NCBI GenBank assembly: GCA_965113315.1
Contig: OZ220371.1
Length of the DNA stretch: 64,000 bases
Source of the DNA: Podarcis vaucheri
Lineage: Eukaryota
Reading direction: 5' to 3' (one strand)
Positions 12,147 to 52,870 of this stretch are shown in pieces (position 1 is the stretch's first letter; each line of letters starts with the position of its first letter). The notes below the pieces were generated by a model. That model ran no database searches. It saw only the letters and a list, made by a program, of their open reading frames with translations, and was not told the origin of the DNA. Position numbers and translations under genes: made by a program.

Positions 12147-12931
12147 TTTTGTTGTTGGCATCTGTCTGTCTCAAGAGACAATGGAGTGTGCCTCGGGAGG
12201 TGAAGTCAAACCGCTGGGAAATCACGGCACCTGGTGTTACATCAGAGATGGTAACTCATAGTTGCTGCCTCCCGCATTGTTTTTTGCTGAAAGCAGCACC
12301 GAAGTGATATCTCTGGGGTGCAAGCCTGGACCGTGTGTATGGAGGTCCTGGGCTGCCCAGATGACAATATCTCCCTCTCGTCCTCACTGATGTGGTCCAA
12401 AAGAAAGCAGACCAAATACATTTTGTAGCAGCTTGGCTGCAGGAGTTGCCGGAAGGACGTGTACAAGAAGGCATCCAACAGCCTCCGGATTTGTGTAGGG
12501 TTTACTCTTTAGCTTTTTCTTCTCCCAGAGATGTTCCCATGGGGTTTACTCCTGAAGCTGGTGGGGTTTATGCCATATGGTGTGTTAGAGGAGGGGTAGT
12601 ACCTCTGGTGTGGAGGAAGTCATGCTGCTTCTGGAGTAGTTTGTCCACCTTTGATCCTCATCCTGCACTCCACATGTGACAACAACCACATCCCAGCTTC
12701 AAATGGCCAGCTAAACCAGATGAGGGTAGCCAATGGATCTCAGACCCTCCGTGAGTTAGGAACTTTCATTGCATGCAAAGATAGGCTCTGGTGGATTGAG
12801 CGACGAGACTAGTAGTGAGTCCAGCAATAAAGAAGGGAAGTGAGGAGCAGATGGGGCTTGTCAACCTGGGAAGGTAGCCCATCTAGGTGGAGGAAAGATC
12901 TGATCCTAAAATTCTACTGCCTTGTGGCCTG
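12147..12931 (-). mobile_element. Non-autonomous RTE-derived retroelement, copy 1, with inverted 5' half
   Basis: 3' half (12147-~12540) on minus with RTE-type end CTCCATTGTCTCTTGAGACAGACAGATGCCAACAAC. 5' half (12563-12927) on plus. Homologous to 19442-20120 and 48383-48890. 8-bp TSD GTAGGATT (12139-12146, 12932-12939). Confidence 0.85.
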
Positions 12932-17334: not shown

Positions 17335-17678
17335 GGGGACGCGGGTGGCGCTGTGGGTTAAACCACAGAGCCTAGGACTTGCCGATCAGAAGGTCAGTGG
17401 TTCGAATCCCCACGATGGGGTGAGCTCCCATTGCTCAGTCCCTGCTCCTGCCAACCTAGCAGTTCGAAAGCACAATGCAAGTAGATAAATAGGTACCACT
17501 CTGATGGGAAGGTAAACGGCATTTCTGTGTGCTGCTCTGGTTTGCCAGAAGCAGCTTAGTCGTGCTGGCCACGTGATCTGGAAGCTGTACGCCGGCTCCC
17601 TTGGCCAGTAAAGCAAGATGAGCGCCGCAGCCCCAGGGTCAGGCACGACTGGACCTAATGGTCAGGGGTCCCTTTACC
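17335..17678 (+). mobile_element. Sauria SINE (tRNA-derived head, BovB-related tail)
   Basis: GGGACGCGGGTGGCGCTGTGGGTTAAACC head, B box GGTTCGAATCC, ACCTTT-type tail. 12-bp TSD TATATGTGCAGA (17321-17332, 17679-17690). Confidence 0.96.
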
Positions 17679-18212
17679 TATATGTGCAGAAGCCTCTGGG
17701 TAAATTAAGATGGTGGGTGCCTGGGGTCTGCCCTTTGCATTATGCCCTAGACTTTGGGAGCTTGAGGCTCACAGGGGAAGTAGGCAGTGTTCAGCCAAGA
17801 GTCTAAGACAAACAGAGAACACAAAGGACCTGGACCAGCTCCAAAGGGCCCTGCTAAGGCAACTATTACAGTAGTTGTTGTCTTTGCAAGCAGCTAGAGA
17901 CAACTGAAGCTTTGTGTATGCTGACCAGACCTGTAGTATGCTAGGTTCTGCTTCCCTGGAGGAACTGAATGGTTAGTTAAAAGTTCTTCACTATTTTTTT
18001 GTAGTATTTGACTTCTTAAGGCTGAGGAGACAGTGATACCCCAGGGGAGCCATTATCTCATTCAGAGGATGGCAACTGAAGTGTGTCCTCCAGTTGGAAG
18101 GGCCATGAATAAGGTACTGGTGGTTCTGCTCCCAAGGAAGCAGCCTGAACCTCATCCTTATCAGAGTCGTCCACTATGCACTGCAAGGTCTCTAGGTTAC
18201 GGGATGATGATG

Positions 18213-18398: not shown

Positions 18399-18505
18399 GG
18401 GTTGCATTCAACTAAGTCCTACTCAGAACAGACCCACTGAAATTAATGAACCTACTGAAATTAATGCACCTAAATCAGTCGTGTCCATTAACTTCAGTGG
18501 GTCTG
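18399..18505. repeat. Short palindromic interspersed repeat (Harbinger-MITE-like relic)
   Basis: AGACCCACTGAAATTAATG..CATTAACTTCAGTGGGTCT inverted arms, plus an internal ~18-bp tandem duplication. Confidence 0.55.
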
Positions 18506-19441
18506 AACACCACTCAAAGCATTTTTAAAGAAAAAAGAAGTGAGCAAAGGGACAAAATTGAAGTCCCGCAGTAGACCTAAGGCTGCAGTCCCCTGGGCCA
18601 CCCCCTGATAAAGTCCCTATATATAAAGTCCTTATTTCACCATTCCTCCTTCCCTACCTGTGGTTAATTGAAGACTTGCAGGACAAGCTGAAGAAGGGAG
18701 ATGAGCTATCCCATGAATTTGTATCTTGAACAAAGATATGAACATCCAAACCAGGCCAACAAAGCCCATAAGCACTAATACATCAGAATGTTTTTCTTTC
18801 TGAACCAACAAGGTATTGATAATAGGCTTGTTGAATGCATGTTACATAATTCCACACTGAAGATCCAGTTAGCACAATTAGTTTTAATTAGATGGCTCTT
18901 TCTACACACAATATAAGGCTGTCTCCAATTCTTTATACAAATTTTAAAAACTTTAAAACTGAGCTTTGTTGAGTACTCACAGTTCTTATTTGCTTGAAAT
19001 GTAGCATTGGTAATGAGCTTTCCTTAAGTAAAAAATGCAAATCTGATTTTTGCATATATCAGCATTAGGCTGCATTTGCTGTTCCATTCAGGCATATCCA
19101 ACTGTCCAATTAAGATGGGTCAGAATTATTTCTTACAGCTGCTTTATAAAATCCTGCTGATTTGTAACAGATATTGTAAATCCCTGCTCTAAGACAAAGA
19201 CCGGACCCTTTAATGCACTCTGTTGCACACATGATCAGAAGCTTTCTCATCCACTTCAGTGAGTGGTGCTTCTTGTGCTGTTAATACCTAACGTAAAGGC
19301 AATACCTAGCTGGGTATTAATTATAAATCAATCTGTAACATATCTGAACTGAGCCATTTTCAGTATTAGTGCTTTAAAATGCACTCTCCTTTCCTATCTC
19401 TTTATGTATAATGTGTCAGATATTAGTGAAAATATGCTTTA

Positions 19442-20120
19442 TTTGTTGGCATTTGTCTGTCTTGAGAGACAATGGGGTGCGCCTCCAGCGGTTAAGTCAA
19501 ATCACTGTGTTAGCAGCAGCAAAGTGACCTTGCCAGGGCACAAGCCTGGGCAGTGTGTATGGAGGTCCTGGGTGGTCCAGATGACAAGACTCCCTCCCCT
19601 ACTTCAGCCACGCTGATGGGGTCCCAAGGAAATCGGAGCAATATGTTTGGCACCAGCTTGACTGTGGGAGTTGCAAGAAGAAGGTGTACATGGCCCCATC
19701 CCACTGCCTTAGGGACTTAATTCTGGATTTGTGTAGGGCTTTACTCCCGCAAGGTAGTGAAGTTTTAGGACCAGGGTTTTCTTTTTTCCTAGATGAGCCT
19801 CATTTGCCCCTCACTTCTCCCTATGGCATGTGCAGAAACCACCTTCTTGACCGCTCAATACACTGGAGCCTTTTTTCACATGCAGGGGAAATTCCTAACT
19901 CACTCAGGGTTTGAAGCCCATCAGCTACTCTCACTTGGCTTAGCTGGCCAGTTGAAGCCATTCCCGGGATGTGGCCACTGTCACGTGTTGACAGCTCCTA
20001 GGTGTCAGAGGTGAGAACTGAGTGCAAGGTGGGGACCAAAGGTGTTCAAACTACCCCAGATAGAGCATGCCATATTCTCCACCAGAGGTACTACCTCTCC
20101 CCTAACACTGCATACACCCC
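19442..20120 (-). mobile_element. Non-autonomous RTE-derived retroelement, copy 2, retaining both ends
   Basis: 12-bp TSD AAATATGCTTTA (19430-19441, 20121-20132). RTE-type 3' end ..CATTGTCTCTCAAGACAGACAAATGCCAACAAA. No RT ORF. 5' end begins GGGGTGT. Confidence 0.9.
19928..20120 (-). ncRNA. Predicted HDV-like self-cleaving ribozyme at the element 5' end (decayed copy)
   Basis: P1 GGGGTGT/ACATCCC (7 bp), GG after P1, P2 TTCTCAC/GTGAGAG, P4 TGGC/GCCA, J4/2 GCTAA, all in HDV order. G1 abuts the TSD. Confidence 0.7.
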
Positions 20121-20329
20121 AAATATGCTTTAACATGCTGACATAAATAATGTCATGTTATGTATGCCTATGAAGCACACCTGTATTTTTAACAAGAAAA
20201 TTCTTAACCCATTACACATGAAAGGCTTCTATAACAAAATGATTGGCACAGTACCAATCCAATGTATAAACTGATGCCACATAAGCTATTGACACATAAA
20301 TATCTCTATTCAGCTTTTCATTCATTTTC

Positions 20330-20674: not shown

Positions 20675-21017
20675 AAAGGTAAAGGTACCCCGACCATAAG
20701 GTCCAGTCGCAGATGACTCTGGGGTTGCGCGCTCATCTTGCTCTATAGGCTGAGGGAGCTGGCGTTTGTCTGCAGATAGCTTCCGGGTCATTTGGCCAGC
20801 ACAACTAAGCTGCTTCTGGCAAACCAGAGCAGCACACTGAAACACCGTTTACCTTCCCGCCGGAGCGGTGCCTATTTATCTACTTGCACTTGATGTGCTT
20901 TCGAACTGCTAGGTGGGCAGGAGCTGGGACCAAACAACGGGAGCTCACCCCGCTGCCAACCTTCCAATCATCAAGCCCTTGGCTCAGTGGCTTAGACCAC
21001 AGTGCCACCCGCATTCC
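20675..21017 (-). mobile_element. Sauria SINE (second subfamily, B-box region deleted)
   Basis: AAAGGTAAAGGT tail and full body on minus. TSD GTAACTGTAA (20665-20674, 21022-21031). Confidence 0.95.
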
Positions 21018-25901: not shown

Positions 25902-26264
25902 GGGACGCGAGTGGCGCTGTGGTCTAAACCACTGAGCCTTGGGCTTGCCAGTCAGAAGGTTGGCGGTTCGAATCCCTGCGACGGGATGAGCTCCCGTTGC
26001 TTGGTCCCAGCTCCTGCCAACCTAGAAGTTTGAAAGCATGCCAAAGTGCAAGTAGATAAATAGGTACCGCTCTGGCGGGAAGGTGAACAGCATTTCCTTG
26101 CGCTGCTCTGGTTTTGCCAGAAGCGGCTTAGTCATGCTGGCCACATGACCCGGAAAAACTGTCTGCGGACAAACGCCAGATCCCTTGGCCAGTAAAGCAA
26201 GATGAGCACTGCAACCCCAGAGTCGTTCGCGACTGGACTTAACTATCAGGGGTCCCTTTACCTT
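25902..26264 (+). mobile_element. Sauria SINE (second subfamily)
   Basis: Full head, B box and CCTTTACCTTT tail. 11-bp TSD TATAAGCAGTA (25889-25899, 26265-26275). Confidence 0.96.
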
Positions 26265-28866
26265 TATAAGCAGTAGAAGCCAGGAAGACTGCCTTACATT
26301 TCTCAATGGAGTGTTCTAAAGTTGCCCAATGTGTCAGTGTCTATCTGTGAAGGTAAGCTGATCTGGAACTGGCCAGTGCATGTCTCAGGACACCCTTGAA
26401 GCTGGTTGCATAGTCACCAAAGAAAGAGTATGATTCCAGTATAACATAGGTAATGTCCTTTTTGATACCACAACAAAAAGACTGATGCTTCCAAAGTGCT
26501 ACCTTTGTGGTAAGGCTTCATATACAAGATTCTCCACTGATACAGTAAGAGTATGTTTAAAAATTGATTTGACAACTTTCAACTGTCTTTGCTGTCATTT
26601 GAGCACTGACATTTCAATAGGATAATATTGTGGAAAGACAAAAGGTAGTAAAGAAATAAGCAGCCCCAGTAGCTGCTGTTAAAATTATTTTAAAATCATA
26701 GAAAATAAAAATTTAAACCTAGATAGTGTAATTCATTTCATGTGCCTGTAATCTAAGGTTGCCATGTTCATTGCTGGGGTAGCCCAGTCATATGGGTGGG
26801 GTACAAGTAATAATAATAATATTTATATTTATAATAATTTGCATTCCTGTGTTATAACACTGGAATAATTTTTCAGCACTTCCCCCCAAAATGCATTAAT
26901 ATAATAAATATATTGCTTAAGAGTGATTTACAAGCCTTATAGGATACAACCATAAATTTTGAGTTTTCATTTCTAATTATTTACATTGAAACTGTGGAAG
27001 TAACTGTACAATACAGAAAAGCCATTTTGCTTTTATATAGTCACTAGCAATTCTCCAACAAGCTGTAAGATGATATGATTCTAAGCAGTACAGCTACAAT
27101 CCTACTTTGTCAAAAGGTGAGGTTATATTATGTTTTACTTCCTGGGGAAAATATGAGTAAGCAGAAAAGCAATGTCATCCCCTTTCATCTAACACTTTAA
27201 AGTTTAAATGAAGTTATTTTAGAGACCAGCAGAAAAATGACCTTATTCAGCTTTAGAAAGCAGTCTGGAACATAAATTTGTAATAAAATAGCTTTGCCAT
27301 TTTTATTTCCTTTTTCTTTTTGGCCATGCTGGAACCTGGATGTAGTCCACTTGAGACTTTATCTTAAGAGTGCTTTCTTAAGACTAACCCTTATTTAGTA
27401 ATAAAATAAATGTGTTTTATAAAGAAGTGTGGGACCCCCACGGACTTGTTTCTAGCAGCTTGTTGCAAAAAAAACCAAACCCCACAAAACCTTTTTTCTA
27501 ACTGCCGGTAAGAAACTAATTCTCATATGAGATGGAATGTTCTGTCCAATCCTGTTTCACAGTAGCTTTGAGTGCTTGACTGTACTGAAAAGGAAGGGTA
27601 TTATTTGATTGTTCATTGTTACCAGCAGAAGGCTTTCCATTGTCTTTAAATAATAATTGTCACAAAACCTTCTATAGCGTAGTTTCCATTTTGCTTTGAT
27701 CAGTGTGTATGTAGTGTGTAACATCTGTAATAGTCAATCTTGCAGCCCAATCTGGTGCATGTTTGGTAAACCCCATGAAGTTCTACAATACTTTCAGATA
27801 AGCAGGTATAGCATTGTAGACCTTGATCTCTTGTGTGTTGTGGTCATGGATGTAAAATGATTTCCAGATAGACAAATAGAATAATGGCAGTCTTATTCTC
27901 ATTGTGTGTCATTTGAATTGTTCTCGAATAATATTTCTGACACCTTTAAAGAACCAGATTGCAGCAAATGGCTTGGTTTAGATTCTTATTTTGATATGCA
28001 CATGCAAATAATCTTGATGCAAAAGTAAAGAATAGGTGGACGGACCAAATAAATTCTTATAGTCTATGGATTACTTACTGTTATGGTTCTATTTGTTGCA
28101 TCATATAATGTTTACATGCCCCCCCCCGCCCAAATATTTATAGTTACATTTTATCAAATAACATTTTCCCATTCCTACATGTTTATTCTGCCTTCAGAAA
28201 ATACAGGGGGGGAATGCAAAGAACTTGCTTTTAAAGTATGTGAATATATAAGTAGATTTATTTGTTAATGTGGGACCGCTTTCATATAAAATTTTGAGAC
28301 ACTTGTACATCCTTCCTACGAAGACAGATAAAATCCCATAAATTCTTCAATCAAAACTGAGCGAAAGATAAAAGTCTACGGAAATAGACAATATTTATGA
28401 AAGCCCATAAACAACCTTAAAAAACCTTGAGCAACATAAAAATCGCCAGTGCCAATATATAACAGGGTTGGAATTTTCTGGAATAACATTAATTTCTAAG
28501 CGTTTTGAAAATCTGAATAAAAGTTACTTAAATTCATTAGGGTGACCCATGGAGGCAAAGGGGGTGAAGGAGATAAATGTACATTTTGTATGGGTTCTGC
28601 AGTGCTTTGTGGCACTCTGGTACACATAGACAAGCAATTGTCCTTTACAGCTTTGCTATAAAGCTGTTGTTTGATTAAGAGGCGTATATACCATCTCTTC
28701 ATTCTCAAGTGTACTTCAAACTATTCACATTTTCACTGCCGTAATTGTATTGAAATTAATAGTGTTACAGAGGGACAACGAAGCAAAACAAAAAGAAGGA
28801 GATATGCAGTGGTGGTCTAGATCCTAAAACAGCATGAAATTGTCTGGCTGAAAGATTTCAACTGCT

Positions 28867-42736: not shown

Positions 42737-43092
42737 AAGGTAAAGGTAAAGGGACCCCTGACCATTAGGTCCAGTCGTGGCCGACTCTGGGGTTGCGGCG
42801 CTCATCTCGCTTTATTGGCCGAGGGAGCCGGCGTACAGCTTCCAGGTCATGTGGCCAGCATGACTAAGCCGCTTCTGGCAAACCAGAGCAGCGCACAGAA
42901 ACACCGTTTACCTTCCCGCTGGAGCAGTACCTATTTATCTACTTGCACTTTGACGTGTTTTGGAACTGCTAGGTTGGCAGGAGCAGGGACCAATCAACGG
43001 GAGCTCACCCCGTCACAGGGATTCGAACCGCCGACCTTCTGATCAGCAAGTCCTAGGCTCTGTGGTTGAACCCACAGCACCACCTGTGTCCC
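42737..43092 (-). mobile_element. Sauria SINE
   Basis: (AAAGGT)n tail and full body. 11-bp TSD ATTAGTGTATA (42726-42736, 43093-43103). Confidence 0.96.
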
Positions 43093-48382: not shown

Positions 48383-48890
48383 TGTTGTTGTTGCCATCTG
48401 TCTGTCTCAAGAGACAATGGAGTGCAGCCCCGGAGATGAAGTCAAATTGCTGCATTAGCAACACTGAAATCACTACCCCGGAGCACAAGCTTAGGCAGTG
48501 TGTATGGAGGTCCTGGACTGCCCAGATAACAATACCCTCTTCATCAGCCATGCTGATGGGGTCCAAAGGAAAGCAGAGCAATCGGTTTGCCACCAGCTAG
48601 ACTGCAGGAGTTGCCAGAAGAAGGTGTACAAGGCCCCATCCAACAGTCTTAGGGACTCCACTCCTGATTTGTGTAGGGTTTCCTCCTTAGCTTTTTCTCC
48701 TGAAGATATCCTGCAAGGCAACAAAGGTTAAGGATCTGAGAACCCTTACCTGGTTTAGCTGGCCAGTCTAAGCTGTTTACCAGGATGTGACTGCTGTCAC
48801 ATGCTGACAGCTTCTGGGAGTCACAGGTGTGAGCTGAGTGCAGGATGTGGACCAAAGGTGGACAGCCCAGAAGGAGCTGTCCCCCACCAC
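48383..48890 (-). mobile_element. Non-autonomous RTE-derived retroelement, copy 3 (internal deletion, 5' tip missing)
   Basis: (CAA)n tail and body colinear with copy 2. Retains the best-preserved ribozyme core at 48748-48829. Confidence 0.85.
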
Positions 48891-50455
48891 TGCCAGTACC
48901 TAGTGTAAACCCTCAGAATGCTACAAGGAGGGGGAAGAATTGGACTAGCCAAGGTTCTGCTGGATCCTAAGCCCAGCTATCAGTGATGGACTAGATTTGG
49001 GCCTCTCTGATGTGCTACCCTAGAGCTGATGCACCCGCCCCGCCCCCCACCTCAGAATGTGGGGAAGACACACTACCCTACCTTCTGCTCTGGCCAGCAT
49101 GAGTGGCAGGGCTTCAGATATGATGGTGGCTCTGCTGCTCTGTTAAGCCCCACTGGTCCCTGGTCAGGAGTTAGGATTGCTCCCTAATTTGGTTTGGATT
49201 CAACCCTTTTCTTTTGACCCACTCTAGCTGCTATGCATACCGATTTTGCACCATTAGTGCCACTTTCAGAAGTTATTGTGTCAAGTCTAATGCCATGTGT
49301 AGAGCTCAATGATTATTTCTTTTTTGAAAACTGCTGCAGGTATGTTGTTTTGAACATTCCCAAAGTATTCGAAAAGCTAATGCATTTTGTGTATTATGCC
49401 AGCCTTCTTGCTAACATCTCGGTATTTGACCTCAGCATCTAGGACTATCAAAGCAAATACCATATGAGAGGTCAGTGTGATAATAGATTCTATATCCTCA
49501 GATTTTTTAAAAAAAAAATGTTGTCTACAATTATGCAGTCTTTACAGTATTTAAATTGACTCACAATCTGATTCAAAACATCCACAAGAAAGACTTTCTG
49601 GCCTGAATCCAAAGAACTGTGCAACTAGTTTCACATGCCAAAGAGAACTTTGGATACATTTCCCTTAAACAGCAGCCCCTTATTCCACTTGACAAACCTA
49701 TTTTGAACTGAAGGGTGGTTTCAAGAGTAGTTTGTGACATGTCTGCTATTCATAGGGGCGTGGAACATCAACTGGGCATGCCCAAGCAGTTCTCTGGGTC
49801 CCAGCTATTGGATCAAGTAGGGCTTGCTTCCTAGTAAGTCTTACTTAAGATTTCAGCTTCAGCCCACTGACCTTTCATTATTGTATTCCTAATTATTATT
49901 AAGCCCTCTCACTGAAGCATACAACAATTTTTACTGCACTATTTTTGTCTTTTTAATCTACTGCCTTATCTGTTAAATTACAATTTTAAGGATGTCCCAA
50001 GATCTTACAGAAATTTATATGTGCTTGTGTTGTGTGTACCTTATACTCTTGTGAAGAGTCTATTCTATGTGATACAAAAACTATAGCAATTCAACTTTAT
50101 AGTTGTATGGAAAGTAACATCATTAAGCTCCCTCTGCAAATATTTTTACTGCCATTTAAATTTAGACTCTTGTCATATGTCACATTTGATTTTATTTTAT
50201 CTTTAGGCTAGTGAAAGCATAGCTAAAGGAAACAATCTTGGCTAAGCATGCCTTGAGGGTCCTCTCTGCTTGCTTTCTTCATGCCTTATACTTTTGTCAC
50301 TCAAGCTGCATAGATGCACTCCAATAATTAATAGTAAACCGGGTGGGGAGAAAAAATTATTGGACCCCTTCTTGAGATCTTGTGTATAAAAAGAAAAAGT
50401 TCCCATGAGTGAAGTATATAAGTTAGCTTTTTTCAGGAAAAAGAAAAGGAATGAA

Positions 50456-50787
50456 NNNNNNNNNNNNNNNNNNNNNNNNNNNNNNNNNNNNNNNNNNNNN
50501 NNNNNNNNNNNNNNNNNNNNNNNNNNNNNNNNNNNNNNNNNNNNNNNNNNNNNNNNNNNNNNNNNNNNNNNNNNNNNNNNNNNNNNNNNNNNNNNNNNNN
50601 NNNNNNNNNNNNNNNNNNNNNNNNNNNNNNNNNNNNNNNNNNNNNNNNNNNNNNNNNNNNNNNNNNNNNNNNNNNNNNNNNNNNNNNNNNNNNNNNNNNN
50701 NNNNNNNNNNNNNNNNNNNNNNNNNNNNNNNNNNNNNNNNNNNNNNNNNNNNNNNNNNNNNNNNNNNNNNNNNNNNNNNNNNNNNNN
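50456..50787. other. Assembly gap (332 N)
   Basis: Run of N. Confidence 1.
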
Positions 50788-52510: not shown

Positions 52511-52870
52511 AAAGGTAAAGATAAAGGGACCCCTGACCGTTAGGTCCAGTCACGGATGACTGTGGGGTTGCGGCGCTCATCTTGCTTTACTGGCCGAGGG
52601 AGCCGGCGTACAGCTTCTGGGTCATGTGGCCAGCATGACTAAGTTGCTTCTGGTGAACCAGAGCAGCACACAGAAATTCCGTTTACCTTCCTGCCAGATT
52701 AGAAATAGCGGTACCTATTTATCTACTTGCACTTCGTGCTTTCGAACTGCTAGGTGGGCAGGAGCAGGGGCCAAGCAACAGGAGCTCACCGTGTTGCGGG
52801 GATTCGAACCGCTGACATTCTGATCGTTAAGCCCTAGGCTCTGTGGTTTAACCCACAGCGCCACCCGCAT
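52511..52870 (-). mobile_element. Sauria SINE
   Basis: Tail AAAGGTAAAGATAAAGGG and full body with a short internal insertion (ATTAGAAAT). Probable TSD CCTTAAAG (52507-52514, 52879-52886). Confidence 0.95.

What the first reader, a model, noticed from the sequence alone, without database searches (positions are those of the whole stretch)
19928..20120. HDV-like self-cleaving ribozyme forming the exact 5' end of a lizard non-coding RTE retroelement
Seen on the minus strand, in canonical HDV order. P1 5' GGGGTGT (20120-20114). A ~95-nt structured J1/2. P2 5' TTCTCAC. P3 and L3. P1 3' ACATCCC (19972-19966), giving a 7-bp P1. GG, able to pair with the L3 CC (P1.1). P4 TGGC/GCCA. J4/2 GCTAA (19944-19940), then P2 3' GTGAGAG. 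G1 directly abuts the 12-bp TSD, so the element starts precisely at the predicted cleavage site. The inverted 5' half of copy 1 also begins at GGGG (12563). Established: HDV-like ribozymes process the 5' ends of R2, RTE and some other non-LTR elements, and GCUAA is the J4/2 carrying the catalytic C in antigenomic HDV and R2 ribozymes. Inference: this ORF-less element has no tRNA-type Pol III head and liberates itself from read-through transcripts by self-cleavage. I do not know of this being described for a squamate non-autonomous family, but could not search.
Basis: partly seen in the sequence, partly recalled or inferred. Interest (0 to 1): 0.85.

Follow-up and report, generated by a model that had tools for sequence, protein, structure and literature searches.

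The report
Decayed HDV-like ribozyme candidate, retroposon head
The first 193 bases of a dead 679-base retroposon copy look like the worn remains of a hepatitis-delta-type self-cutting RNA sitting exactly at the element's 5' end, a known trick of RTE-type retroposons, but with an odd catalytic loop and no proof of cutting.

Summary
The element is real. It is 679 nt on the minus strand (20120-19442), non-coding, with a perfect 12-bp target-site duplication. The window holds three copies, and sequencing contigs hold thousands of pieces.

Rfam and the strict published HDV descriptor find nothing.

A refined register does better, using the family-majority letters recovered from reads:
- P1 has 7 Watson-Crick pairs, P2 has 10-11 bp, P1.1 is CC/GG, L3 starts UCCU.G, and J4/2 is CUAA.
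- It scores 21 of 22 pairs, which 0 of 4000 anchored shuffles reach.
- Untouched copy 3 scores 19 of 22 (12 of 4000).

Three departures remain:
- The invariant L3 C is an A.
- About 20 nt, including a 17-nt hairpin, are inserted in L3.
- The middle pair of P3 is A.C in most of the sequences I could see.

This copy itself is dead, because its first L3 letter is A instead of U.

Cleavage is untested, and three copies cannot show covariation. The RTE assignment could not be tested.

Verdict: a plausible (about 0.5) atypical member of the known 5'-end HDV-like ribozymes of retroposons. The scan has already flagged the same family elsewhere in this genome (s1-852196, s1-854974, s1-851473).

The parts
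19442..20120 (-). Copy 2 of the retroelement: 679 nt, non-coding, made of two modules. The 5' module is about e1-310, followed by a variable joint at e312-379, then the 3' module with an (AAC)-type tail. Element coordinate e = 20121 - x.
   Evidence: TSD-defined ends. Self-BLAST and nhmmer find three copies. Repeat depth in DNA contigs starts at 19443 and stops at about 20116-20125. ORFs are at most 76 aa.
20121..20132 (-). 5' target-site duplication, TAAAGCATATTT
   Evidence: Identical 12-mer at both ends.
19430..19441 (-). 3' target-site duplication, TAAAGCATATTT
20114..20120 (-). P1 5' strand, GGGGTGT (e1-7). The predicted cleavage site is 5' of G at 20120.
   Evidence: It pairs with 19972-19966. 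Position e6 is T in copies 1 and 3.
20018..20113 (-). J1/2, 96 nt. It is predicted to fold as a long irregular hairpin (e9-98).
   Evidence: MFE structure. No covariation among the three copies.
20007..20017 (-). P2 5' strand, e104-114.
   Evidence: Pairs with e182-193 with C183 bulged. Family-majority G113 and G186 restore two pairs that are broken in this copy.
20004..20006 (-). P3 5' strand, GAC (e115-117)
   Evidence: Pairs with GTC in copy 3. In this copy the partner is GCC, giving an A.C mismatch.
19976..20003 (-). L3, 28 nt. It reads ACCTAG (family majority TCCTAG, against the canonical UYYHCG), then AAG, a 17-nt hairpin (19994-19978) and TG.
   Evidence: The descriptor is from the PMC4870747 supplement.
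19973..19975 (-). P3 3' strand, GCC (e146-148), directly abutting P1 3'
19966..19972 (-). P1 3' strand, ACATCCC (e149-155). The family majority is ACACCCC.
   Evidence: At 19969, A>G (+ strand) in about 80% of contig depth.
19964..19965 (-). P1.1 3' strand, GG (e156-157), pairing with C120 and C119 of L3
   Evidence: C155-G156 is a CpG, which explains T155 in copy 3 and A156 in about 35-40% of the family.
19945..19960 (-). P4 hairpin, TGGCT/GGCCA with a 6-nt loop. About 5 bp here, about 3 bp in copies 1 and 3.
19940..19943 (-). J4/2, CTAA (= CNRA). C at 19943 is the putative catalytic cytosine.
   Evidence: Invariant in all three copies.
19928..19939 (-). P2 3' strand, e182-193 (GCCAAGTGAGAG; family majority ACCAGGTGAGGG)
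12152..12830 (-). Copy 1. The 3' part is in sense (12522-12152). The 5' part is inverted (12563-12830 reads in sense on the + strand), with element nt 1 at the inner joint. This is a twin-priming-type inversion. A deletion of about 30 nt removes the P2 5' strand, the P3 5' strand and half of L3.
48388..48913 (-). Copy 3. It reaches the same 5' end (AGGGTTT at 48913-48907) and keeps the best HDV-like register: P3 GAC/GTC, L3 TCCCAG plus hairpin, P1.1 CC/GG, J4/2 CTAA.
   Evidence: Scores 19 of 22 exactly at 48913.

Best explanation
Copy 2 is a dead copy of a high-copy, non-coding, two-module non-LTR retroelement. I think its master copies carried an atypical HDV-like self-cleaving ribozyme in their first ~193 nt.

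**The fold, in the family's majority letters**
- P1: 7 bp, starting at nt 1.
- J1/2: a 96-nt structured domain.
- P2: extended to 10-11 bp.
- P3: 3 bp, directly abutting P1 3'.
- L3: begins UCCU.G.
- P1.1: a two-pair CC/GG helix.
- P4: weak.
- J4/2: CUAA, holding the putative catalytic C.

**Proposed mechanism**
1. The element is transcribed as part of longer host or read-through transcripts.
2. The RNA cuts itself 5' of G1. This would give the family its sharp 5' end.
3. A partner LINE's reverse transcriptase copies the RNA from its (AAC)-type tail by target-primed reverse transcription. This makes the 12-bp TSD and, in copy 1, a twin-priming inversion.

**Shown:** the element, its ends, the pairing potential and its excess over chance.

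**Inferred:** cleavage, the identity of the partner LINE, and that an A in place of the invariant L3 C plus a ~20-nt L3 insertion still allow catalysis.
For: **The 5' end**
- TSDs abut G1.
- All three window copies reach the same first nucleotide. One does so through a twin-priming inversion, whose inner joint marks the RNA's 5' end.
- Repeat depth in about 6000 laid contigs stops at 20116-20125.

**Family-majority letters**
- Where they bear on the fold, they improve it or keep it. C152 makes P1 all Watson-Crick, G113 and G186 add two P2 pairs, and T118 restores the L3 U.
- A182 and G192 keep their pairs. None of the listed letters breaks a pair.

**Score on 22 pairs plus TYYHNG, CNRA and R1**
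- Copy 2 with the majority letters scores 21 of 22. Untouched copy 3 scores 19 of 22, exactly at its 5' end.
- Across the window, a score of 19 or more occurs at 3.2e-4 of positions and 21 or more at 1.6e-5.
- In anchored shuffles that keep the first 7 nt, 19 or more occurs 12 times in 4000 and 21 or more never.

**Agreement with the literature**
- The L3 insertion lies just after the conserved G. There the published descriptor allows an optional base, and antigenomic C29 is bulged out and least conserved (PMC3386971).
- A large structured J1/2 and a long P2 are features of the drz-Agam-2 ribozymes (PMC4908430).
- R2 ribozymes tolerate J1/2 of 216-498 nt, a missing P4 and mismatches at the top of P1 (PMC3774820).
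- 5'-end HDV-like ribozymes are reported for RTE and five other LINE clades. Bipartite non-autonomous RTEs keep the LINE's 5' end (PMC5786205).

**One compensatory-looking change**
- Copy 3 has A1-T155 where the other copies have G1-C155.
Against: - No Rfam ribozyme model matches copy 2 or copy 3, even at E<=10.
- The strict published descriptor has no hit in the window.
- The L3 C, one of the six invariant nucleotides, is A in copies 2 and 3 (deleted in copy 1) and, as far as the shown rows go, in the family majority. It is T in one expressed paralogue.
- An R2 element with changes at the L3 C and G is inactive (PMC3774820).
- A 28-nt L3 with a hairpin has no precedent in the papers I read.
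- The middle P3 pair is A.C in copy 2. C147 also stands in copy 1 and in one paralogue, though their P3 5' strand is deleted or unseen.
- P4 is weak outside this copy.
- e6 is T in copies 1 and 3, so P1 may have a mismatch.
- My refined descriptor was tuned after I had seen the sequence, so its P-values are optimistic, perhaps 10-30 fold.
- The read table was truncated (186 rows hidden), so hidden majority letters could break pairs.
- Three copies show no true covariation.
- No clustering of RNA ends at 20120 was seen, though RNA depth there was only about 5-12 reads and came from a sister species.
Confidence: 0.5

Rival explanations
1. The likeness is chance, or the region is another kind of 5'UTR structure. 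The 5' end is the transcription start of an internal (probably Pol II) promoter inherited from the parent LINE's 5'UTR. P1 is only the closing stem of a large 5' domain, and there is no self-cleavage.
For:
- The fold energy is not exceptional (z = 0.25).
- No Rfam hit and no strict-descriptor hit.
- An invariant L3 nucleotide is missing, and L3 is four times too long.
- Every LINE or SINE family has a defined 5' end without needing a ribozyme.
- PMC5786205 states that bipartite LINEs are very likely Pol II transcribed.
- My refined model was fitted after I had seen the sequence.
Against: - The refined model scores 19-21 of 22, against 3e-4 to 2e-5 of natural positions and at most 0.3% of anchored shuffles.
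- Five of the six invariant letters and all four helices fall in the right order and spacing, exactly at nt 1.
- Family-majority letters improve the fold rather than erode it.
Confidence: 0.33
2. The fold descends from a real RTE-type HDV-like ribozyme, but it was already catalytically dead in this family's masters. The C-to-A change and the L3 insertion would be the cause. The structure was kept for another reason, such as a 5'UTR structure for translation or RNP assembly, or it was not yet eroded.
For: - The overall architecture is kept, while exactly the catalytic loop is aberrant.
- The L3 insert differs in sequence, and is hardly a hairpin, in one expressed paralogue.
- The sow-bug R2 element with changes in the L3 C and G is inactive.
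Against: The family still has a sharp 5' end at the predicted cleavage site, and thousands of pieces in the genome. That is easier to explain if the processing worked.
Confidence: 0.12
3. A self-cleaving ribozyme of another class (hammerhead, twister, hatchet, pistol, hovlinc) or a Pol III small-RNA head defines the 5' end.
For: Other first-reader notes on this genome mention twister-like heads on RTE-like elements (s1-848944). These are unverified.
Against: No Rfam family of any kind reaches even E<=10 on 19850-20200 or 48700-48940, apart from three or fewer obviously spurious hits. ARAGORN finds no tRNA-like sequence.
Confidence: 0.03

Closest known systems
HDV-like ribozymes at the 5' ends of RTE-clade retrotransposons (drz-Agam-2 family; Ruminski et al. 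2011, as cited in PMC3774820 and PMC5786205; PMC4908430)
   Same: The ribozyme starts at nt 1 of the element. It is a nested double pseudoknot with a large structured J1/2 domain, an extended P2 (12 bp in Agam-2, 10-11 bp here), a G at +1 and CNRA in J4/2.
   Different: The L3 here is 28 nt with an inserted hairpin, and it has A where the invariant C stands. The Rfam drz-Agam models do not match. The host is a vertebrate non-coding derivative, not an autonomous insect RTE. Activity is untested.
R2 and R4 element HDV-like ribozymes (PMC3774820)
   Same: They process the 5' end of a co-transcript. They tolerate very long J1/2 (216-498 nt), a weak or absent P4 and mismatches at the top of P1. The catalytic C and a few L3 letters are conserved.
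   Different: R2 keeps a compact, 15-nt P3/L3/P1.1 core with the C and G of L3 rigidly conserved. R2 is site-specific in rDNA, whereas this family is dispersed.
Bipartite non-autonomous RTE elements (RTESINE1/2, WALLSI3, MAR4, RTE-N families; PMC5786205)
   Same: A 5' end joined directly to a 3' end, with no ORF and no small-RNA head. It retains the true 5' terminus, which that paper links to a possible 5' ribozyme.
   Different: I could not show homology of either module to an RTE LINE. No LINE partner is in the window, and the tools hold no repeat library.
L1Tc/NARTc Pr77 (L1TcRz) of trypanosomes (PMC3185411, PMC3383444)
   Same: An HDV-like ribozyme in the first nucleotides, shared by an autonomous LINE and its non-autonomous derivative.
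   Different: That one is compact (77 nt), doubles as an internal promoter, belongs to the ingi clade and is experimentally active.

Membership tests
HDV-like self-cleaving ribozymes (published RNArobo/RNABOB descriptor, PMC4870747 suppl. Figs S11-S14) | Nested double-pseudoknot order: P1 - J1/2 - P2 - P3 - L3 - P3' - P1' - P1.1 - P4 - J4/2 - P2' | tested here: met
   All strands can be placed in this order. Copy 3 pairs 19 of 22. Copy 2 with majority letters pairs 21 of 22. Copy 2 as it stands places about 19 of the 22 by hand but fails the L3 letter test.
HDV-like self-cleaving ribozymes | A purine (G) at +1 paired to a pyrimidine, in a P1 of 5-7 bp | tested here: met
   G1-C155 with 7 pairs. 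The majority C152 makes all 7 Watson-Crick. Copies 1 and 3 have one mismatch at e6.
HDV-like self-cleaving ribozymes | P3 of 3 Watson-Crick pairs directly abutting P2 5' and P1 3' | tested here: inconclusive
   Copy 3 has GAC/GTC (met). Copy 2 has GAC/GCC, an A.C mismatch. C147 also stands in copy 1 and in one paralogue, whose 5' strand is deleted or unseen. The family-majority letter at e147 was not visible in the truncated table.
HDV-like self-cleaving ribozymes | L3 of 7-8 nt reading U Y Y H C G (N) Y, with U, C and G invariant | tested here: not met
   L3 is 28 nt. The majority reads UCCUAG followed by about 22 more nt. The U is present in the majority but is A in copy 2. The G is present. 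The C is A (or T in one paralogue). The strict descriptor has 0 hits.
HDV-like self-cleaving ribozymes | P1.1: two L3 nucleotides pair with the two nucleotides after P1 3' | tested here: met
   C119-G157 and C120-G156 in copies 2 and 3. The variants at e155 and e156 fit CpG decay.
HDV-like self-cleaving ribozymes | J4/2 = C N R A (plus at most 1 nt) immediately before P2 3' | tested here: met
   CTAA (19943-19940) is invariant in all three copies. It abuts P2 3' only if C183 is taken as a single-base bulge, which the 'with insertions' descriptor allows. Otherwise J4/2 is 6 nt.
HDV-like self-cleaving ribozymes | Match to a curated covariance model (Rfam HDV_ribozyme, CPEB3, drz-Agam and others) | tested here: not met
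   No hit at gathering score or at E<=10 on copy 2 and copy 3. The models cannot absorb the J1/2 and L3 insertions, so this is weak evidence.
HDV-like self-cleaving ribozymes | Site-specific, divalent-metal-dependent self-scission that depends on the J4/2 cytosine | not testable with these tools
   This needs an in vitro assay. RNA reads gave no end cluster at 20120, at very low depth.
Bipartite non-autonomous RTE-clade elements | The 5' and 3' ends are homologous to an autonomous RTE LINE, with a short microsatellite-type tail and no ORF | tested here: inconclusive
   The two-module build, the (AAC)-type tail and the lack of an ORF are seen. No RTE LINE is in the window. A protein-level search of the 3' module found only short spurious ORFs and no LINE ORF. 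No repeat library was available.

The most novel reading that the evidence does not exclude
The masters of this vertebrate retroposon family use an active HDV-like ribozyme whose catalytic loop L3 carries a ~20-nt hairpin-bearing insertion and an A in place of the 'invariant' C. That would widen the known sequence space of the fold. It would also show that descriptor and covariance-model searches miss a whole class of 5'-end ribozymes in vertebrate genomes.
Probability: 0.3. Interest if true: 0.65.

Novelty: new variant of a known kind. Interest (0 to 1): 0.5.

Why it matters
If the family's master RNA really cuts itself, three things follow:
- It would be a vertebrate, high-copy example of 5'-end processing by an HDV-like ribozyme in a non-coding LINE derivative.
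- It would support the published suggestion that bipartite RTE derivatives keep the LINE's 5' end because of such a ribozyme (PMC5786205).
- It would show that L3 tolerates a domain insertion and the loss of an 'invariant' cytosine. Current descriptors and Rfam models would then systematically miss such variants.

If it does not cut, the case is a useful warning. Loose HDV descriptors are satisfied by about 40% of G/U-rich starts.

Tried and rejected
**Searches that found nothing**
- Rfam at gathering score on the whole window, and at E<=10 on copies 2 and 3: no ribozyme or small-RNA family.
- ARAGORN: no tRNA-like head.
- nhmmer with 5' and 3' module profiles: only the three known copies in the window.
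- Strict published HDV descriptor: 0 hits.

**Descriptors that did not discriminate**
- My first 'canonical' descriptor without sequence constraints hit 24% of positions, so I dropped it. An earlier version timed out.

**Attempts to collect more copies**
- One metagenome scan for a conserved 21-mer gave two hits, both chance matches with no homology beyond the pattern.
- A protein-word search with an antisense ORF of the 5' module found nothing.

**Other dead ends**
- Pfam and the ESM Atlas on those ORFs: nothing, so they are spurious ORFs.
- RNAalifold on J1/2 of the three copies: no compensatory pair.
- The papers by Ruminski 2011, Webb 2009 and Nehdi 2006 are not held, so what I say about them rests on citing papers.
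- Pol III A and B boxes, judged by eye: e66-80 resembles a B box in copy 2 only and not in copies 1 and 3. Rejected.
- Read laying gave majority letters for only some positions (186 rows hidden), so e6, e104, e107 and e147 stay unknown.
Full report
**What is there**

On the minus strand, 20120-19442 is a 679-nt element. It is flanked by a perfect 12-bp target-site duplication, TAAAGCATATTT, at 20132-20121 and 19441-19430. I number it e = 20121 - x.

Its largest ORFs are 76 aa or less. ARAGORN finds no tRNA-like sequence in the whole window. Rfam finds no family at gathering score.

Self-BLAST and nhmmer profiles find two more copies:
- Copy 3 lies at 48913-48388 on the minus strand.
- Copy 1 has its 3' part in sense (12522-12152) and its 5' part inverted (12563-12830). 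Element nt 1 sits at the inner joint, as twin priming predicts.

All three tails end in ...GAGACAGACAGATGCCAAC(AAC)n-like sequence after a small palindrome.

**Family-level data**

I laid Logan contigs of the same organism (X1), contigs of a sister species (X5), and raw RNA reads of that sister species (X23, X24) on 19300-20300 at 80% likeness.
- About 6000 contigs per DNA run matched.
- Repeat depth begins at 19443, with 138 and 129 loose ends there.
- Depth collapses between 20116 and about 20125, so G1 is the family's 5' end.
- The 3' module is 5-20 times more abundant than the 5' module.
- e312-379 is nearly private to this copy, so the element is built from two modules with a variable joint.

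The table also gives positions where most of the family differs from this copy. In the candidate region these are e113 C>G, e118 A>T, e124 G>A, e133 A>G, e136 C>T, e152 T>C, e182 G>A, e186 A>G and e192 A>G. e156 G>A is seen in 35-40% of depth. The table was cut (186 rows hidden), so other positions are unknown.

RNA reads were few and partial. They come from a few loci that contain fragments of the element, and no cluster of molecule ends was reported.

As written, though, it is not more than chance.
- I coded a descriptor as loose as the description: a 7-bp P1 with G.U allowed, a 7-bp P2 anywhere, CNRA within 12 nt of P2 3', any 4-bp P4, and any dinucleotide able to pair with the two bases after P1.
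- It is satisfied at 8% of arbitrary window positions.
- It is satisfied at 39% of positions that start with a G/T-only 7-mer, and by 378 of 1000 dinucleotide shuffles that keep GGGGTGT.
- The element itself gives four different solutions.
- The pseudoknot-free MFE contains P1, but it is no more stable than shuffles (z = 0.25).
- Rfam gives no HDV-type hit even at E<=10 on copy 2 or copy 3.
- The strict published descriptor has no hit anywhere in the window, even with J1/2 opened to 500 nt. That descriptor reads: P1 RNNNN*:*NNNNY; P2 6-7 bp; P3 NNN:NNN Watson-Crick; L3 TYYHCG*Y; RN; CNRA*.

**Why I did not stop there**

Two earlier notes on this genome, from other windows of the same family, claimed that family-majority letters restore the fold. 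I tested that with my own read table.
- **P2** runs e104-114 with e182-193, with C183 bulged. The majority G113 and G186 restore two pairs that are broken in this copy, and T114 pairs with A182 (G182 here, a wobble).
- **P3 and P1** then fall into place: P3 5' (GAC, e115-117) follows P2 directly, and P3 3' (e146-148) directly abuts P1 3'.
- **J4/2** becomes exactly CUAA.
- **P1** becomes seven Watson-Crick pairs with the majority C152.
- **L3** begins UCCUAG in the majority (ACCUAG here). It supplies the CC that pairs with G156 and G157.
- **CpG decay** explains two variants. C155-G156 is a CpG, which accounts for T155 in copy 3 and A156 in part of the family.

Copy 3, untouched, has P3 GAC/GTC, L3 TCCCAG..., P1.1 CC/GG, CTAA, and A1-T155 in place of G1-C155.

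**Is the refined fold above chance?**

I scored 22 pairs: P1 7, P2 first 10, P3 3 (Watson-Crick only) and P1.1 2. I required R at +1, L3 starting TYYHNG, and CNRA. I allowed an L3 of up to 36 nt, J1/2 of up to 130 nt, 0-1 nt between P2 and P3, and 0-2 extra nt in J4/2.

| Sequence | Score at its 5' end |
|---|---|
| Copy 3, natural sequence | 19 of 22 |
| Copy 2 with the 12 listed majority letters | 21 of 22 |
| Copy 2 as it stands | fails the L3 test (A118) |

| Null | Score 19 or more | Score 21 or more |
|---|---|---|
| All natural positions of the window, both strands | 3.2e-4 | 1.6e-5 |
| Anchored dinucleotide shuffles keeping the first 7 nt | 12 of 4000 | 0 of 4000 |

The descriptor was tuned after I had seen the sequence, so I discount these values by one to one and a half orders of magnitude. 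They still do not look like chance. The direction of the majority letters adds only modest support (roughly P = 0.05), because most of them are transitions opposite G or T and cannot break a pair.

**What speaks against a working ribozyme**

- L3 has A (or T in one expressed paralogue seen in the RNA loose ends) where all known members have C. That C is one of six invariant nucleotides on which the searches were built (PMC3386971; descriptor).
- An R2 element with changes at the conserved L3 C and G is inactive (PMC3774820).
- L3 is 28 nt instead of 7-8. After the conserved G come AAG, a 17-nt hairpin (e127-143) and 2 nt.
- In mitigation, the insertion sits where the descriptor has an optional base, and where antigenomic C29 is bulged out and least conserved in selection experiments. 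So it is sterically conceivable, but I found no precedent.
- The middle P3 pair is A.C in copy 2. C147 also stands in copy 1 and in one paralogue, and only copy 3 has T147.
- P4 is about 3 bp outside this copy. P4 is dispensable in some R2 ribozymes.
- This copy has A118. The equivalent U23A mutant of the antigenomic ribozyme is inactive.
- Copy 1 has lost the P2 5' strand, the P3 5' strand and half of L3 in a deletion of about 30 nt.
- Dead copies are expected for a retroposon and say nothing about the master.
- Three copies cannot show covariation. RNAalifold on J1/2 found no compensatory pair.

**Comparison with what is known**

- HDV-like ribozymes at the exact 5' end are described for R2, R4, L1Tc/ingi, RTE and other clades (PMC3774820; PMC5786205).
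- The drz-Agam-2 ribozymes have a large structured J1/2 and a 12-bp P2 (PMC4908430). That is the same build as here.
- R2 ribozymes have J1/2 of up to 498 nt.
- Kojima (PMC5786205) describes bipartite non-autonomous RTEs that keep the LINE's true 5' end, and suggests the 5' ribozyme as a reason.

What would be new is the L3 variant and a squamate high-copy family.

I could not verify 'RTE'. No LINE with these ends is in the window. An HMMER search of the 3' module's frame against 1.84 billion representatives found only 11 short ORFs without Pfam domains. One is from a porcelain crab genome and the others are from ENA, JGI, Logan and NCBI contigs. I could not verify 'lizard' either, because organism names were coded.

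**Limits**

- The single metagenome scan gave two chance hits.
- A word-based protein search with a 5'-module ORF found nothing.
- The papers by Ruminski 2011 and Webb 2009 are not held.

**Verdict**

| Reading | Probability |
|---|---|
| Family masters carried an atypical HDV-like ribozyme that defines the 5' end; this copy is a decayed relic | about 0.5 |
| Chance or another 5'UTR structure, with a promoter-defined 5' end | about 0.33 |
| Real descent from an HDV-like ribozyme, but already inactive in the masters | about 0.12 |
| Another ribozyme class or a Pol III head | about 0.03 |

The scan has flagged the same family before on other DNA of this genome (s1-852196, s1-854974, s1-851473).

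Noticed in passing
window 19513-19716 (-), the 3' module of the element: The translated frame of the 3' module has 11 relatives among 1.84 billion protein representatives. All are short ORFs with no Pfam domain. One is from the porcelain crab Petrolisthes cinctipes (KAK3875478.1), and the others are from ENA, JGI, Logan and NCBI contigs. The tail sequence therefore occurs far outside reptiles, either as an old conserved LINE/SINE tail or through horizontal transfer.
   Followed up: partly
window 17506-17682, 20677-20858, 26071-26276, 42741-42917, 52516-52691: A second repeat family of about 177 bp, SINE-sized, has five copies at 79-92% identity. One copy lies about 550 bp upstream of this element's 5' end. 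No tRNA-like head was found by ARAGORN.
   Followed up: no
window 20014-20047 and 19742-19809: In genomic contigs, e74-107 is about 6 times more abundant than the rest of the 5' module, so it is probably shared with another repeat family. e312-379 is almost private to this copy, marking a variable joint between the two modules.
   Followed up: no
window 19906-19979: RNA-seq of a sister species holds this fragment of the family at depth 100-170 on one strand. The loose ends agree at 0.8-1.0, so the reads come from a few transcripts that have taken in a piece of the element (exon or UTR), not from element-length RNA.
   Followed up: no
window 12152-12830: Copy 1 shows a twin-priming-type 5' inversion. 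Element nt 1 lies at the inner joint, and about 100 nt of the element are missing between the two arms.
   Followed up: partly
window 18429-18505: This stretch matches itself in reverse complement (77% over 78 nt). It is an imperfect palindrome.
   Followed up: no
window 50456-50787: A run of 332 N (assembly gap or masked). I left it untouched.
   Followed up: no
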